From: Octopus sinensis
Taxonomy: Eukaryota
Direction: 5' to 3'
NCBI RefSeq assembly: GCF_006345805.1
Contig: NW_021827984.1
Span: 1-9,641 of the forward strand
DNA length: 9,641 bases
Shown: in pieces, positions 485 through 9,620 of the stretch
How the letters are laid out: the number at the start of each line of letters is the position of its first letter
Position numbering within the stretch: the stretch's first letter is position 1
Made by a program: the position numbers and the translations under genes
Notes under the pieces: model-generated
What the model was told of the DNA's origin: nothing
The model's database searches: none
Seen by the model: the letters and a program-made list of their open reading frames with translations, nothing else

Positions 485-703
485 ATTCTTTTCTACTCTA
501 GGCGCAATGCCCGAAAATTTTATAGGAGGAAACCATCCGATTAGACCGACCCAAGTACGCAACTGGTACGTAATTTATCGACCCCGAAAGAATGAAAGGC
601 AAAGTCGACCACGGCGGAATTTGAATTCAGAACGTAAAGACAGACGAAATACTGCTCGGCATTTCGCCCGGCGTGCTAACAATTCTGCCAGCTCCCCACC
701 GCC
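485..703 (-). mobile_element. tRNA-derived SINE, near full length (cephalopod-type family with CTTTCATCCTTTCGGGGTCGATAAATT-like core)
   Basis: The reverse complement reads GGCGG..GAGCTGGCAGAATTGTTAGC (A-box region)...GTTCTGAATTCAAATTCCGCC (B-box like)...CTTTCATTCTTTCGGGGTCGATAAATTACGTACCAG...TAGAGTAGAAAAAGAATATT. It is homologous to the copy at 6235-6399 in this window. Confidence 0.9.
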
Positions 704-1544: not shown

Positions 1545-1690
1545 CCGTTTTTATTTTCTTTTTGTCTTCCCAATACTTTCAGTCGAAGAATGTAGGTTCG
1601 AAACTGCAAAGACTTTTCCATTCTTCCAGAGCGTTAAACCAATGCACCTGCCTTCGTCTGTCTTTTGTTTTCCGTAAATTTGAACTAAAC
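1545..1690 (+). mobile_element. Penelope-like terminal-repeat fragment (copy A) with degenerate minimal hammerhead motif at 1576-1611
   Basis: CTTT CAGTCGA A GAAT GTAG GTTC GAAAC TGC AAAG followed by ACTTTTCC...GAGCGTTAAACCAATGCACC..GTCTTTTG. It is homologous to the reverse complements of 1715-1890 and 9375-9520. The family assignment is inferred from the HHR architecture. Confidence 0.7.
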
Positions 1691-1712
1691 ATATATATAT
1701 ATATATATATAT
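1691..1712. repeat. (TA)n microsatellite separating two inverted Penelope-like ends
   Basis: Directly visible. Confidence 0.95.
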
Positions 1713-1714
1713 GT

Positions 1715-1890
1715 ATAGGGAGAGTTTACTGAAAAAACAAGAGACGAAGACAGGTGGTGTACAAAACAAACAGATGTATTAGTATAATGCTCAGGAATAG
1801 AAAAAGTCTTTTACGTTTCGAGCCTACGGTCCTCTCCAGAAAGGGACACAGAAAAAAAACAAAGAAAGAAAAAAATGTGTGTAGTGGCTA
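1715..1890 (-). mobile_element. Penelope-like terminal-repeat fragment (copy B) with minimal hammerhead-like motif at 1808-1843
   Basis: The minus strand reads CUUU CUGGAGA G GACC GUAG GCUC GAAAC GUA AAAG. It aligns with 9385-9520 through TAGTGGCTA. Confidence 0.75.
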
Positions 1891-2392
1891 ATAAATTTGA
1901 ATAATAACGATGAAAAATTGAATATTAATTTGATTAATATCAATTTAAAACCAATGGCCTAGCATATTGAAAAATCTGAAGATTCAGAAAAAGTGGTAAC
2001 AATGAAACTGGGCTTGTGATTAATCTTTATATTTTGTATTTTTTTCATTTGTCTTGCTCGCTTACGTTCTGGCGTTTGCTGAATTTTCTTGAGAACAATC
2101 TTTTCTAAGTGGTCAGGCCATATAGGGGTCTACCTCTAGCATAATGGATGTACACTTAGTGGTCATCCCTCTTATATGTATGTAATATATATATATATAT
2201 CAAACCCAAGCAGTTCTATTTGTTTATTTTTCATCATTGATTCACTATCTGCTCGACTGGATTCCTCTTGATAGCCACTGTTTACACCGCAGATTTACTA
2301 AAGGTTTCGGAATGTAAGTTGAAATCGTTTGAGCTCTATTCAGTATTTTCTGTATTGAGTCTTTGGATCTCATCTTCCTACATAAATGCATC

Positions 2393-2438
2393 CATACATA
2401 CATACATACATACATACATACATACATACATACATACA

Positions 2439-2468
<30 letters not shown>
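2393..2468. repeat. (CATA)n microsatellite
   Basis: Perfect tetranucleotide run. Confidence 0.97.
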
Positions 2469-3265: not shown

Positions 3266-3435
3266 ATATATACATACATACATACATACATACATACATA
3301 CATACATACATGCATACATACATACATAAATGCATACATGCATACATACATACATACATACATACATACATAAATGCATACATGCATACATACATACATA
3401 TATACATGCATACATACATACATACATGTACATAT

Positions 3436-3470
<35 letters not shown>

Positions 3471-3472
3471 CA
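3266..3472. repeat. Compound (CATA)n/(TA)n microsatellite
   Basis: Directly visible; lies where this SINE family has its internal microsatellite. Confidence 0.95.
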
Positions 3473-3483
3473 TACACATTTTT

Positions 3484-3710: not shown

Positions 3711-3897
3711 ACGTGTGTGTATATGTGTATGCGTGAATGTGTGTGTGTATGTGTGAATGTGTGTGTGTGAATGTGTGTCTGTGTGTGAATGCGTGTAGTG
3801 TATGTGTGTGTGCGTGTGAGTGTGGGATTGTGCGTGAGTATGTGTATGTGTGTGAGTGTGTGTATATATATATGTGTGTGTGCGTGTGCGTGTGTGT
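3711..3897. repeat. Degenerate (GT)n microsatellite
   Basis: Directly visible. Confidence 0.92.
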
Positions 3898-3942
3898 GCT
3901 AACTTTTAAGTTTGTGTGCCTACTCCCCCGCCCCTCCCCCAC

Positions 3943-4108
3943 TTCAAAACCGTTGTTAGTTTGTTAATGTCATCGTAACTTAGCGTTTCGGTAAAAAAAA
4001 GTTCATTTAAGAACGAGAATTAGGGGCAATTTCTTCGATTAAAAACCTTTCAATGCACTGCCCCAGCATGGCCGCAATTAAATGACTGAAACAAGCAAAA
4101 GATAAAAT
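3943..4108 (+). mobile_element. Diverged SINE 3' half
   Basis: CGTAACTTAGCGTTTCGGTAAAA...CCCCAGCATGGCCGCAATTAAATGACTGAAACAAGCAAAAGATAAAA matches 5497-5640. Confidence 0.8.
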
Positions 4109-5231: not shown

Positions 5232-5642
5232 CGTAGGAGTGGCTGTGTGGTAAGTAGCTTACTTACGAACCACATGGTTCCGGGTTCAGTTCCACTGCGT
5301 GTCATCTTGGGCAAGTATTTTCTACTATAGCCTCGGGTCGACCAAAGCCTTGTGAGTGGATTTGGTAGACGGAAACTGAAAGAAGCCCGTCGTATATATC
5401 TATATATGTATGTATATGTGTATGTATATGTTTGTGTGTCTGTGTTTGCCCCCCCCCCAACATCACTTGACAACCGATGCTGGTGTGTTTACGTCCACGT
5501 AACTTAGCGGTTCGGCAAAAGTAACCGATAGAATAAGTACTAGGCTTACAAAGAATAAGTCCTGGGGTCGATTTGCTCGACTAAAAGGTTATGCTCCAGC
5601 ATGGCCACAGTCAAATGACTGAAACAAGTAAAAGAGTAAAAG
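5232..5642 (+). mobile_element. Full-length tRNA-derived SINE with internal (TA/TG) microsatellite
   Basis: A box TGGCTGTGTGGT (5240-5251), B box GGTTCAGTTCC (5283-5293), body ...GGATTTGGTAGACGGAAACTGAAAGAAGCCCGTCG, microsatellite at ~5395-5440, and 3' tail CCAGCATGGCCACAGTCAAATGACTGAAACAAGTAAAAGAGTAAAAGA. I recognise this as an octopus-type SINE from recall. Confidence 0.92.
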
Positions 5643-5649
5643 ACCACTT

Positions 5650-6104: not shown

Positions 6105-6190
6105 TTGGTGTCAAATTGATCGACTAATCCCTTTAACATGTTGCCTCAGCATGACTGTAGTCTAATGACTGAAACAATAAAAGATAAAAG
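6105..6190 (+). mobile_element. SINE 3' tail fragment
   Basis: GTCAAATTGATCGACTAA...CAGCATGACTGTAGTCTAATGACTGAAACAATAAAAGATAAAAGA matches the 5560-5642 tail. Confidence 0.8.
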
Positions 6191-6234
6191 ATTCATCTCG
6201 TACAAATTTGCTCGTTATAATTACAGGTTTAATT

Positions 6235-6399
6235 CAGTATTTCTCCCGTCACCAAGTTCTGAGTTCAAATTCCGCCGAGGTCGACTTTACCTTTCATCCT
6301 TTCGGGGTCGAGAAATTAAGTACCAGTTACGCACTGGAGTCGATGTAATCGACTATCCTCCCTCCCCAAAGTTTAGGCCTTGTACCTATTGTAGAAAGG
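6235..6399 (+). mobile_element. 5'-truncated SINE flanked by 18-bp target-site duplication
   Basis: Homologous to the reverse complement of 485-660. ATAATTACAGGTTTAATT occurs exactly at 6217-6234 and 6400-6417. Confidence 0.9.
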
Positions 6400-6459
6400 A
6401 TAATTACAGGTTTAATTTTGTTTGTTTGTTTGCTGGTTGTTACGTTGGTTTAAATGCTT

Positions 6460-6640
6460 GCACAAGGCCAGTAATCTCGGGAAAACGATTTCATCGAGCC
6501 TGCAGTTCACTTGGTAGGTATTTTCTCAAATCAGAAAGAATAAAATGTAAAGTCGATTCCTGCCAGCGTTTGAACGCAGAACGTAATCTCAGCAGAAATA
6601 GTGCAACACGAATATTCTGGCGCTGTAACCTTCGTGGCTG
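6460..6640 (-). mobile_element. Diverged SINE (same family as 485-703), inverted relative to 6235-6399
   Basis: CACAAGGCC...CTTGGTAGGTATTT...AAAGTCGATTCCTGCCAGCGTTTGAACGCAGAACGTAA aligns with 500-640. Confidence 0.7.
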
Positions 6641-6695
6641 GTTGTGACATAACTGTTGTTATTGTTGTTGTTTAGATGGTGGTGGTGGTGGTATT

Positions 6696-6834: not shown

Positions 6835-7083
6835 TGCATGTGTATGCGTGTATATGTTACATACATACATACATTTAAATATACATATTTTTACATACAT
6901 ACATATATGTGTCTGTATGTGTGTGTGGCATGCGTGTATATATGAATGTATTTGTGTGTTAATACACACAGACACACAGACACCACACATACATATATAT
7001 ATACACATACATATACATGCATATACACACTGACTTAGGCATACGCACTTTTACATACTCTATATATATATATATATATATAA

Positions 7084-7144
<61 letters not shown>

Positions 7145-7165
7145 AATATATATACATAAATATAT
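6835..7165. repeat. Compound (TA)n/(CATA)n/(GT)n low-complexity tract
   Basis: Directly visible. Confidence 0.9.
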
Positions 7166-7225
7166 ATGAAAGCAGATGCGTCTATATTTCACAGTTTTTA
7201 TGCTTGAAACTTAGGGTGTTATATT

Positions 7226-8067: not shown

Positions 8068-8212
8068 TGCAGGCAGAGTGGTTAAGAAGCTTTGGGTTCA
8101 GTCCCACTGCGCGGCACCTTGAGCAAGTGTCTTTTAATTTTGACGAAGCCAACTAATGCCTTATATGGGAATTTATTTGTCAGATGGAAACTGTCTGAAA
8201 GCCCGCCGTATA
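8068..8212 (+). mobile_element. Diverged SINE 5' half with internal deletion
   Basis: GGCAGAGTGGTTAAGAAGCTTT, GGGTTCAGTCCCACTGCGCGGCACCTTGAGCAAGTGTCTT and GATGGAAACTG..AAAGCCCGCCGTATA are all homologous to 5236-5395. Confidence 0.8.
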
Positions 8213-8244
8213 TTATTACACACACACCACACATATTATATGTA

Positions 8245-8257
8245 TGTATATATAATA

Positions 8258-8350
<93 letters not shown>
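8245..8350. repeat. (TA)n microsatellite
   Basis: Directly visible. Confidence 0.97.
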
Positions 8351-8399: not shown

Positions 8400-8762
8400 G
8401 AATATATATTAAACTTTTAATACTTTTTGATAGTTTAAAATTTTAAAAATAAATAAATAAATAAATAAATAATAATATATATATATTTTTTTTTATAAGT
8501 TTAATTAATTAATTTAAATAATTTTTAAAATTTAACTTTAATTTAAATATTTTAATTGGATTTTATATTCTATATTTTATATTTTTTATATATTTTTTAT
8601 ATTTTTTAATTAATTTTTTTCTACGTATTGGCTTATGATTTTCACTGCTTGATTTGCCTAATAGTGGTTTTATCTCCATTTAATATAATATAATATAATA
8701 TATATATATATTTAATATAATATATATATATATACATATATATATATACATTATATATATAT

Positions 8763-8797
<35 letters not shown>

Positions 8798-8850
8798 CAT
8801 ACATATATATAAATATATTATATATATATATATATATTATATATATATAA
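8400..8850. repeat. Extremely AT-rich low-complexity tract including (AAAT)n and (TA)n
   Basis: Directly visible. Confidence 0.85.
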
Positions 8851-8899
8851 GCAATAATAAATCTGTGAACGAGATATAAACAGTCAATGCACGACAATA

Positions 8900-9301
8900 T
8901 GAGGTATATTGCCATCTCAATATGGCTAACCACTAAGGGTGGGTGTTACTGTAGCTTGTAGCCCCAGGAGAACATCTCCTCCAGCTGGCTATAGGCACAA
9001 TTCCTGTGCCCTGTCGGTATTTGCAAAGGGAGTTACTGGAAAAAGGATATTAATATTTGCATTGGGAACTCCTTTCATCGAAAACCGGTGATTGTCGTAC
9101 GCTGATGACGGGTCAATACCCAGAAACTGCAGTCCGTGCGTATCACTTAGGTTGACGAGGAAGGGATGACCTCCCTTTGCAAATACCGATAGGGCACAGA
9201 AAGTGTGCCTATAGCCAGGTGGAGATGTTCTCCGGGGGCTACAAGCTACAGTAACACCCACCCTTAGTGGTTAGCCATATTGAGATAGCAAGTATACCTC
9301 A
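8900..9301. mobile_element. Foldback element with ~130 bp terminal inverted repeats enclosing a hammerhead ribozyme
   Basis: 8901-9032 aligns with the reverse complement of 9171-9300 with 6 substitutions and 2 small indels by manual alignment, including a 52-bp perfect run (8914-8965). Confidence 0.9.
9088..9146 (+). ncRNA. Type I hammerhead ribozyme (predicted cleavage 3' of C9134, GUC triplet)
   Basis: Stem I CGUACG(9096-9101)/CGUGCG(9135-9140); core CUGAUGA (9102-9108); stem II C-GGGU[CAAU]ACCC-A (9109-9122); GAAA (9123-9126); stem III AC[UGCA]GU; C17 = 9134. Stem I continues past an internal loop as GUGAU(9088-9092)/AUCAC(9142-9146). Confidence 0.88.
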
Positions 9302-9323
9302 CACACACACGCACACACATATA

Positions 9324-9364
<41 letters not shown>

Positions 9365-9380
9365 TATTAATATATATATT
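9300..9380. repeat. (CA)n then (TA)n microsatellite
   Basis: Directly visible. Confidence 0.92.
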
Positions 9381-9620
9381 AGCATAAACAACAAACACGT
9401 GTATTAGTTTAACGCTCAGTGAGTGACAAAGTCCTTTTGCGTTTCGAGCCTACGCTCTTCGACAGAAAGGAACACAGAAATAAGCAGAGAAAGAAAATAA
9501 AAAAAAAGGTTTAGTGGCTAGCGATCAATCATGGCAAATGCCGGACAAAGGTTATCAGACAGGAAAGCTAGAAAGAAGGGATGATAATCAAGTAGTGGTG
9601 ATCCCAAAACTAAGGTGCGC
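9381..9620 (-). mobile_element. Penelope-like terminal-repeat fragment (copy D, best preserved)
   Basis: Aligns with copy B (1760-1890) and carries the minimal HHR-like motif. The distal boundary is uncertain. Confidence 0.75.
9433..9470 (-). ncRNA. Minimal hammerhead-like motif (variant core), probably inactivated in this copy
   Basis: The minus strand reads CCUUU CUGUCGA A GAGC[GUAG]GCUC GAAAC GCA AAAGG: 5-bp stem I, perfect 4-bp stem II, and GCA in place of the GUA found in copy B. Confidence 0.65.

What the first reader, a model, noticed from the sequence alone, without database searches (positions are those of the whole stretch)
9070..9166. Canonical type I hammerhead ribozyme at the tip of a 400-nt foldback element
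All catalytic-core nucleotides are present in the correct topology on the + strand: CUGAUGA (9102-9108), GAAA (9123-9126) and the GUC cleavage triplet (9132-9134). Stem I is 6 bp (CGUACG/CGUGCG), followed by a UGU/U internal loop, then GUGAU/AUCAC, AACC(9083-9086)/GGUU(9150-9153) and UCCUUUCAUCG(9070-9080)/CGAGGAAGGGA(9156-9166). The stem I internal loop sits where natural type I HHRs make the tertiary contact with loop II (here CAAU). The only blemish is a C9109-A9122 mismatch at the base of stem II, possibly CpG decay of a C-G pair. Animal HHRs are known from tandem satellites/non-LTR retrozymes and from Penelope terminal repeats. I do not know of one embedded in the loop of a long inverted-repeat element, so this could be an undescribed ribozyme-bearing mobile element.
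Basis: partly seen in the sequence, partly recalled or inferred. Interest (0 to 1): 0.92.

Follow-up and report, generated by a model that had tools for sequence, protein, structure and literature searches.

The report
Solo hammerhead ribozyme relic in octopus DNA
A real but off-consensus hammerhead self-cleaving RNA motif sits in a short dead retroelement fragment in octopus-like DNA, and the 400-base hairpin around it looks like a known way such elements insert, not a new kind of mobile element.

Summary
Chance is unlikely: 0 of 3000 shuffles of the window gave such a motif, and a metagenome tandem repeat (L077) carries an 86%-identical core. "Canonical" is too strong. No Rfam hammerhead model reports it even at E<=10, although the same search finds the control motifs. 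C9109 and A9122 are unpaired at the base of helix II. Helix III is 2 bp with a palindromic loop, the animal design that works as a dimer, and only one copy is present. The window is non-coding octopod DNA. The arms differ by 6 random-type mismatches and 2 indels, so they look like a DNA-level inverted duplication, not a conserved RNA rod. The foldback lies between two (AT)n tracts. That matches published Penelope-like element insertions: an inverted 5'-truncated copy next to a longer copy, hammerhead near the 3' end, (TA)n targets. Best reading: a solo, probably weak or inactive relic of a Penelope-like element or retrozyme. No second copy of the element could be reached, so a foldback family is not excluded. 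New member of a known kind; modest interest.

The parts
9096..9140 (+). Type I hammerhead motif. Helix I 9096-9101 / 9135-9140. Core CUGAUGA 9102-9108. Helix II 9110-9113 / 9118-9121 with loop CAAU. GAAA 9123-9126. Helix III is A9126-U9133 and C9127-G9132 with loop UGCA. Predicted cleavage is after C9134. C9109 and A9122 are unpaired at the base of helix II.
   Evidence: Read directly from the sequence. Only descriptor hit in the window, and 0 hits in 3000 shuffles. Positions 9099-9139 are 86% identical to the hammerhead of L077. No Rfam hit.
9070..9166 (+). Hammerhead hairpin domain: helix I extended by three further helices beyond an internal loop (UGU opposite U).
   Evidence: Fold of 9070-9166 is -35.0 kcal/mol, z = -3.15. 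Pairs checked by eye. The layout matches the helix I plus internal loop of the Rfam HH9 consensus, as seen in the L077 alignment.
9033..9301 (+). Inferred longer, sense copy of the hammerhead-bearing retroelement: 269 nt, 5'-truncated, with its 3' end at 9301. It includes 9054-9068, which pairs imperfectly (12 of 14 positions) with 9172-9185.
   Evidence: Complementarity to the left arm stops at 9032/9033. Folded alone it gives -0.34 kcal/mol per nt with 64% of bases paired; the tandem retrozyme-like monomer of L077 gives -0.25 and 54%. The orientation is inferred from the strand that carries the hammerhead.
8900..9032 (-). Inferred shorter inverted copy: reverse complement of 9171-9301, with its 3' end at 8900. 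It is truncated 4 nt before the foot of the hammerhead hairpin.
   Evidence: 130 aligned columns with 6 mismatches (3 transversion-type, 2 A.C, 1 G.U) and 2 indels. Also reported as inverted repeat I11.
8851..8899 (.). 49-nt unique stretch between the left (AT)n tract and the left arm. It may be the one-sided 'tail' described for Penelope-like element insertions; this is inference only.
   Evidence: Sequence. No counterpart at the right end, which has (CA)n at 9302-9318 instead. The tail concept comes from PMC8557442 and PMC11167929.
8683..8850 (.). Left (AT)n microsatellite: one half of the likely target site.
   Evidence: Tandem Repeats Finder: period 2, 87.5 copies.
9319..9379 (.). Right (AT)n microsatellite: the other half of the likely target site.
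   Evidence: Tandem Repeats Finder: period 2, 31 copies.

Best explanation
The locus is a solitary, non-coding insertion of a hammerhead-bearing retroelement in an octopod genome. The element is either the terminal part of a Penelope-like element (PLE) or one of its non-autonomous 'retrozyme' derivatives.

It landed in a (TA)n microsatellite as two 5'-truncated copies joined head to head. A 269-nt sense copy (9033-9301) keeps the hammerhead. A 133-nt inverted copy (8900-9032) stops just before the hammerhead hairpin. The 400-nt 'foldback' is therefore a by-product of integration, with cDNA primed from both cut DNA strands. It is not a designed RNA hairpin.

The ribozyme is the usual animal type I design, with a very short palindromic helix III. 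That design becomes active when two copies in a tandem transcript pair to form one long helix III. Here there is a single copy, two unpaired bases at the base of helix II, and a competing fold. I therefore expect weak or no self-cleavage at this locus.

Shown: the motif, the helices, the arms and their mismatch pattern, the (AT)n flanks, the absence of coding sequence, and the octopod origin.
Inferred: the PLE/retrozyme parentage, the two-strand priming, and the low activity.
For: Motif and non-chance status.

Link to a true tandem hammerhead repeat: L077 has three hammerheads 530 nt apart, 86% identical to 9099-9139, and also carries extra bases after CUGAUGA.

Animal type I architecture: 6-bp helix I, 4-bp helix II, 1-2 bp helix III with a palindromic loop, acting as a dimer. 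A conserved extra nucleotide lies between positions 9 and 10.1 in PLE hammerheads (PMC4209133). The dimer cofold is -78.5 against 2 x -35.0 kcal/mol and forms an 8-bp intermolecular ACUGCAGU helix. The monomer hammerhead fold is 4.2 kcal/mol above the minimum-energy fold.

Arms: 95% complementary, with mismatches that are not enriched for G.U. The foldback reaches -0.68 kcal/mol per nt and 83% paired bases, far above the tandem repeat L077 (-0.25, 54%). The sense copy alone gives -0.34 and 64%.

Flanks: (AT)n on both sides.

Literature: PLE insertions are 5'-truncated and often have an inverted 5'-truncated copy next to them. They carry hammerheads near the 3' end, prefer (TA)n targets and have a one-sided tail (PMC8557442). 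A purified PLE protein cleaves and extends both DNA strands (PMC11167929). Retrozymes are described as PLE derivatives, and solo monomers are common (bioRxiv 10.64898/2026.07.22.740005).

Organism: octopod.
Against: - No second copy of this element was found, so the parent element is unknown.
- The window has no reverse transcriptase or GIY-YIG remnant.
- The minimal hammerheads typical of metazoan PLEs have a longer helix II (6-8 bp) and a shorter helix I than this one. This motif looks more like the retrozyme type (PMC4209133).
- The 49-nt left extension is longer than the published 30-40 bp tail.
- Inverted duplications can also arise by DNA replication or repair fold-back, unrelated to retrotransposition.
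- Activity was not measured. A hammerhead with a U.U mismatch at the base of helix II still cleaves weakly (PMC7229834), so this one might too.
Confidence: 0.6

Rival explanations
1. A family of foldback or MITE-like elements whose long inverted arms are intrinsic and which carry a hammerhead in the terminal loop. Cleavage at 9134/9135 would open the hairpin loop of the transcript.
For: A compact 402-nt unit with long inverted arms and the ribozyme at the tip. Octopus genomes are repeat-rich. No copy was found that contradicts it.
Against: - No target-site duplication at 8899/8900 and 9301/9302.
- The ends are asymmetric: 49 unique nt on the left, (CA)n on the right.
- The 37-nt unpaired stretch 9033-9069 contains a second, imperfect partner (9054-9068) for 9172-9185. 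The sense copy therefore has its own hairpin, and the left arm looks added.
- Arm mismatches are of random type.
- Three other hammerhead loci with the same helix III (L010, L064, L102) show no inverted repeats.
- The known PLE insertion architecture already explains the shape (PMC8557442).
Confidence: 0.12
2. A one-unit genomic copy of a rod-shaped circular retrozyme RNA. The foldback would mirror the rod-like secondary structure of the circle, opened opposite the hammerhead.
For: The 402-nt size is at the upper end of the ~170-400 nt reported for animal retrozyme RNAs, which are predicted to be highly self-paired (PMC7229834). The sense copy has imperfect self-complementarity around the hammerhead.
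Against: - 95% Watson-Crick arms and -0.68 kcal/mol per nt are far beyond the retrozyme-like tandem monomer folded here (L077: -0.25, 54% paired).
- There is no excess of G.U among the arm mismatches.
- There is no tandem second unit or second hammerhead in the window.
Confidence: 0.13
3. A chance resemblance: the loop of an ordinary palindromic repeat happens to spell a hammerhead core.
For: No Rfam hammerhead model reports it. It has two unpaired bases at the base of helix II and a 2-bp helix III. In a genome of gigabase size some chance motifs are expected.
Against: - 0 of 3000 shuffles of the window give such a motif.
- Among about 100 chance core matches, none combine helix I >=5 bp with helix II >=4 bp unless they are recognisable hammerheads.
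- The core is 86% identical to the hammerhead of a tandem repeat.
- It has the family-typical 6/4-bp helices, the palindromic helix III and the extra base after A9 (PMC4209133).
Confidence: 0.05

Closest known systems
Type I hammerheads of animal non-LTR retrozymes and satellite repeats (newt satellite 2, Schistosoma Sm-alpha, mussel, coral and axolotl retrozymes; PMC7229834, PMC4209133)
   Same: Full catalytic core. 6-bp helix I closed by an internal loop. 4-bp helix II. 2-bp helix III with a palindromic tetraloop that allows a two-copy active form. Low-GC non-coding host sequence. The core is 86% identical to that of the tandem repeat L077.
   Different: Only one copy here and no head-to-tail array. 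Two unpaired bases at the base of helix II. A 4-nt loop II in place of the usual 6. No Rfam score. The unit is embedded in an inverted duplication.
Penelope-like element insertions with pseudo-LTRs (PMC8557442, PMC4209133, PMC11167929)
   Same: Hammerhead on the sense strand near the 3' end. Strong 5' truncation. An inverted 5'-truncated copy directly next to it, giving inverted repeats. (TA)n target. A one-sided extra stretch. An extra nucleotide between core positions 9 and 10.1.
   Different: No reverse transcriptase or GIY-YIG reading frame nearby. Metazoan PLE hammerheads usually have a longer helix II and little or no helix III. Homology to an octopus PLE terminus could not be tested.
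Rfam Hammerhead_1 (RF00163) and Hammerhead_HH9 (RF02275)
   Same: Same order of core elements and helices. The helix I internal-loop layout resembles HH9.
   Different: Not reported even at E<=10. The control motifs L010 and L077 score 32.3 and 24.9 bits.
Foldback elements and MITEs
   Same: Short, non-coding, with long terminal inverted repeats.
   Different: No target-site duplication, asymmetric ends, no other copy seen, and a ribozyme in the centre.

Membership tests
Hammerhead ribozyme, type I | Conserved core letters in order: C3 U4 G5 A6 N7 G8 A9, then G12 A13 A14, then the A15.1-U16.1 pair, then H17 | tested here: met
   CUGAUGA 9102-9108, GAAA 9123-9126, U9133, C9134.
Hammerhead ribozyme, type I | Three helices around the core, with helix I open-ended and helices II and III closed by loops | tested here: met
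   Helix I is 6 bp, helix II 4 bp, helix III 2 bp. Helix III contributes no stability.
Hammerhead ribozyme, type I | G10.1-C11.1 pair directly next to A9 and G12 | tested here: not met
   C9109 and A9122 lie between the core and the first G-C pair (G9110-C9121). A single extra base after A9 is known in natural hammerheads (PMC4209133). I have no precedent for the extra base before G12.
Hammerhead ribozyme, type I | Score at or above the Rfam gathering threshold for a hammerhead model | tested here: not met
   No hit at gathering score or at E<=10. The controls L010 and L077 were detected.
Hammerhead ribozyme, type I | Loop 1 / loop 2 tertiary contact | tested here: inconclusive
   The internal loop UGU/U sits after 6 bp of helix I, as in the HH9 layout. 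Loop II is CAAU and not the usual 6-nt CAnAUA type.
Hammerhead ribozyme, type I | Site-specific self-cleavage after H17 | not testable with these tools
   Needs in vitro transcription or mapping of RNA ends.
Animal non-LTR retrozyme | Head-to-tail tandem units, each with a hammerhead | tested here: not met
   One hammerhead only, and no direct repeat of the unit in the window. Solo monomers of such families are reported as common.
Animal non-LTR retrozyme | Expressed as linear and circular RNA of unit length | not testable with these tools
   No transcript data available.
Penelope-like element insertion | Reverse transcriptase plus GIY-YIG endonuclease reading frame | tested here: not met
   No long non-repeat reading frame and no Pfam domain in the 10 best stop-free stretches. 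This is expected for a strongly 5'-truncated copy.
Penelope-like element insertion | 5'-truncated copy with an inverted 5'-truncated copy next to it, hammerhead near the 3' end, microsatellite (TA)n target | tested here: met
   Arms 8900-9032 / 9171-9301. The hammerhead lies about 165 nt from the 3' end. (AT)n on both sides. Criteria taken from PMC8557442.
Penelope-like element insertion | Sequence homology to the terminal repeat of a PLE of the same genome | not testable with these tools
   No octopus genome or repeat library is searchable by DNA here.
MITE / foldback DNA transposon | Terminal inverted repeats flanked by a target-site duplication, in many dispersed copies | tested here: not met
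   Inverted repeats are present. The flanks ...ACAATA and CACACA... share no duplication. No further copy in the window or in 20 kb of O. vulgaris.

The most novel reading that the evidence does not exclude
Octopods harbour a family of hairpin-shaped mobile elements with a hammerhead in the terminal loop. Ribozyme cleavage would open the loop and release a long, nearly perfect double-stranded RNA with 5'-OH and cyclic-phosphate ends, for instance as a substrate for small-RNA or RNA-editing pathways.
Probability: 0.08. Interest if true: 0.7.

Novelty: new member of a known kind. Interest (0 to 1): 0.3.

Why it matters
Hammerheads are already known by the thousand in animal genomes, tied to retrozymes and Penelope-like elements, so one more solo copy changes little. 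Its value is as an entry point. I found no paper dealing with cephalopod hammerheads in the library searched. The 9033-9301 sequence could be used to pull out the octopus family and to test the recent proposal that retrozymes derive from Penelope-like elements. If transcribed, the locus would also form a roughly 130-bp near-perfect RNA duplex. That is relevant in animals known, from general knowledge, for heavy A-to-I RNA editing. This last point is speculation.

Tried and rejected
- Rfam at gathering score and at E<=10 on three ranges: no hammerhead hit, only microsatellite-driven miRNA noise.
- Search for other copies through spurious reading frames: the 90-aa ORF 8989-9261(-) has no relative among 5.8 billion proteins. 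The 169-aa ORF is not on record as a called gene.
- DNA pattern scans. An arm 22-mer in viral contigs gave 0 hits. A family-specific hammerhead pattern and an arm 20-mer in prokaryotic genome contigs gave 0 hits each. The core pattern in viral contigs gave 1 hit with no helices. The core pattern in metagenomes gave 107 loci, nearly all chance, with four real hammerheads (L010, L064, L077, L102).
- 20 kb of Octopus vulgaris (L109) holds no copy of the element.
- Inverted repeats around three of those hammerhead loci (L010, L064, L102): none.
Ten stop-free stretches gave nothing.
- tRNA scan for SINE heads: none.
- Literature search for the sequence strings found only unrelated primers. The supplement of PMC8557442 is not held.
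- A simple snap-back of the cDNA at the 9054-9068 / 9172-9185 hairpin was considered and rejected. It would not leave 9033-9053 in place.

Full report
**1. The observation**

- CUGAUGA is at 9102-9108, GAAA at 9123-9126 and GUC at 9132-9134.
- Helix I is CGUACG 9096-9101 with CGUGCG 9135-9140.
- An internal loop follows (UGU opposite U9141).
- Three further helices extend the stem out to 9070/9166.
- Helix II is GGGU/ACCC with loop CAAU.

It is only A9126-U9133 and C9127-G9132 around the loop UGCA, so ACUGCAGU is a perfect palindrome.

The minimum-energy fold of 9070-9166 keeps helices I and II (-35.0 kcal/mol, z = -3.15). The region 8895-9305 folds into one long hairpin (-272.5 kcal/mol, z = -26).

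**2. Is it chance?**

I wrote a descriptor for helix I >=5 bp, CUGANGA, helix II >=4 bp with up to 2 and 1 unpaired bases at its foot, GAAA, a short helix III, and UH. It finds this one site in the window and none in 3000 dinucleotide-preserving shuffles of the whole window on both strands. A relaxed 3/3-bp version gives 18 hits in those 3000 shuffles.

There is also an empirical control. The bare pattern CTGATGA-N(8-20)-GAAACTGCAGTC matched 107 metagenome loci. Almost none had the helices. The exceptions are recognisable hammerheads: L010, L064, L102 and L077.

L077 is a 1154-nt contig with three hammerheads 530 nt apart, the classic tandem retrozyme layout. Its ribozyme is 86% identical to 9099-9139. 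So the motif belongs to a real hammerhead lineage.

**3. Why 'canonical' is too strong**

Rfam reports no hammerhead family here. This holds at gathering score and at E<=10 on 501 nt or 121 nt. The same tool detects L010 (Hammerhead_1, 32.3 bits) and L077 (HH9, 24.9 bits).

The likely reasons are these.
- One base (C9109) lies between A9 and the first G-C pair of helix II.
- One base (A9122) lies between that pair and G12.
- Loop II has 4 nt.

An extra base after A9 is a conserved trait of Penelope-like element (PLE) hammerheads and occurs in some viroid hammerheads (PMC4209133). L077 has two such bases. I know of no precedent for the extra base before G12. It is equally possible, and only other copies can settle it.

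Energetically, the hammerhead fold of a single copy is 4.2 kcal/mol worse than a competing fold that ties up C3 and U4. Helix III adds nothing. Two copies cofold to -78.5 kcal/mol against 2 x -35.0, forming an 8-bp intermolecular helix III.

This is the dimer-dependent design described for most animal type I hammerheads: 6-bp helix I, 4-bp helix II, and 1-2 bp helix III with a palindromic loop (PMC4209133). The axolotl variant with a U.U mismatch at the foot of helix II cleaves only 22% in an hour as a monomer (PMC7229834). With one copy at this locus, I expect little or no cleavage. This is an inference.

**4. Surroundings and organism**

The window has no credible gene.
- Its reading frames are mostly microsatellite artefacts.
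- Ten stop-free stretches have no Pfam domain.
- There is no tRNA.
- Microsatellites are dense.

The 169-aa ORF 6138-6647 matches a hypothetical protein of Octopus vulgaris. Interspersed repeats of the window are 83-93% identical to a 20-kb piece of O. vulgaris chromosome OX597819.1. The window is therefore octopod DNA.

The foldback lies between (AT)n tracts at 8683-8850 and 9319-9379. A 49-nt unique stretch sits on the left and (CA)n on the right.

**5. What the foldback is**

Positions 8900-9032 are the reverse complement of 9171-9301. Over 130 columns there are 6 mismatches: 3 of transversion type, 2 A.C and 1 G.U. There are also two indels. Nothing suggests that selection has kept an RNA helix. 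The pattern is that of two DNA copies drifting apart.

| Sequence | kcal/mol per nt | Bases paired |
|---|---|---|
| Foldback 8900-9301 | -0.68 | 83% |
| Sense part alone, 9033-9301 | -0.34 | 64% |
| Tandem monomer of L077 | -0.25 | 54% |

(All.)

The 37-nt unpaired stretch 9033-9069 contains 9054-9068. That segment is a 13/15 direct repeat of 9018-9032 and an imperfect natural partner (12 of 14 positions) for 9172-9185. The sense copy therefore has its own hairpin, and the left arm is an added perfect copy. The added copy ends 4 nt before the GC-rich foot of the hammerhead hairpin, where a reverse transcriptase might stall. That last point is speculation.

There is no target-site duplication at the arm ends.

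**6. Fit to known biology**

PLE insertions are described as follows.
- They are strongly 5'-truncated.
- They often have an inverted 5'-truncated copy immediately next to them, forming inverted repeats.
- They carry hammerheads near the 3' end.
- They show a bias for (TA)n or other microsatellite targets, which hides target duplications.
- They have a 30-40 bp tail at one end only (PMC8557442).

A purified PLE protein cuts and extends both DNA strands (PMC11167929). This gives a direct route to two copies with their 3' ends outward, as seen here. A 2026 preprint argues that animal retrozymes are non-autonomous PLE derivatives and that solo monomers are common. Cervera and de la Pena also noted pairs of hammerheads 100-700 bp apart on opposite strands.

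**7. What remains open**

I could not reach another copy of this element.
- Viral contigs had no copy of the element: the arm pattern gave 0 hits and the core pattern gave one chance match without helices.
- Prokaryotic genome contigs gave nothing with a family-specific hammerhead pattern or an arm pattern.
- The protein-based route gave nothing.

A true foldback family (about 0.12) or a one-unit copy of a rod-shaped circular RNA (about 0.13) is therefore not excluded. Pure chance is unlikely (about 0.05).

**8. Verdict**

This is a genuine but off-consensus type I hammerhead. It is most likely a solo, weakly active or dead relic of a PLE or retrozyme insertion into a (TA)n tract of an octopod genome. 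The hairpin shape arises from the insertion mechanism. It is a new member of a known kind, and interest is modest.

Noticed in passing
L077 (metagenome contig JGI11756J13266_100240), 1-1154; hammerheads at 30-64, 563-597, 1091-1125: A textbook tandem retrozyme-like repeat: 528-533 nt units, 94% identical to each other. Its type I hammerheads fall below every Rfam gathering score (HH9, 24.9 bits against 52). The host organism is unknown.
   Followed up: partly
L010 1426-1469 (-), L064 (- strand, near 305 in reverse coordinates), L102 (- strand, near 19 in reverse coordinates): Three further metagenome hammerheads share the GAAACUGCAGUC palindromic helix III. L102 also has an extra base (A) after CUGAUGA. 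L010 scores 32.3 bits, just under the Hammerhead_1 threshold of 34.
   Followed up: partly
window 5232-5643, 4059-4107, 5592-5640, 6142-6190, 8094-8133: Copies of an interspersed, SINE-like repeat, 83-91% identical to sequences in Octopus vulgaris chromosome OX597819.1 (L109). The 169-aa ORF 6138-6647 is assembled from such repeats and resembles an O. vulgaris 'hypothetical predicted protein', which is therefore probably a repeat-derived annotation.
   Followed up: partly
window 538-654 and 6235-6351: Two copies of another repeat in opposite orientation (117 nt, 84% complementary), 5.6 kb apart. It is also present in L109 at 87-93% identity.
   Followed up: no
window 1689-1890 and 9317-9520: A repeat that starts with (AT)n and contains a conserved stretch (CGTTTCGAGCCTACG...; 86% over 50 nt) occurs just downstream of the foldback and again at 1.7 kb. 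The (AT)n tract that received the insertion may itself belong to this repeat.
   Followed up: partly
window 9018-9032 and 9054-9068: A 15-nt direct repeat (13/15 identical) on either side of the junction between the inverted copy and the sense copy. Both versions can pair with 9171-9185. It may mark how the two copies were joined.
   Followed up: partly
window 2379-2468, 3266-3476, 3713-3898, 6985-7167, 8233-8350: Unusually dense microsatellites: (TACA)n, (GT)n and (AT)n, up to about 210 nt long. They produce most of the long 'ORFs' and spurious Rfam miRNA matches.
   Followed up: no
window 8989-9261 (-): A 90-aa open reading frame runs antisense through the hammerhead and the right arm. It has no relative in 5.8 billion proteins and no Pfam domain. 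It is almost certainly not a gene.
   Followed up: yes
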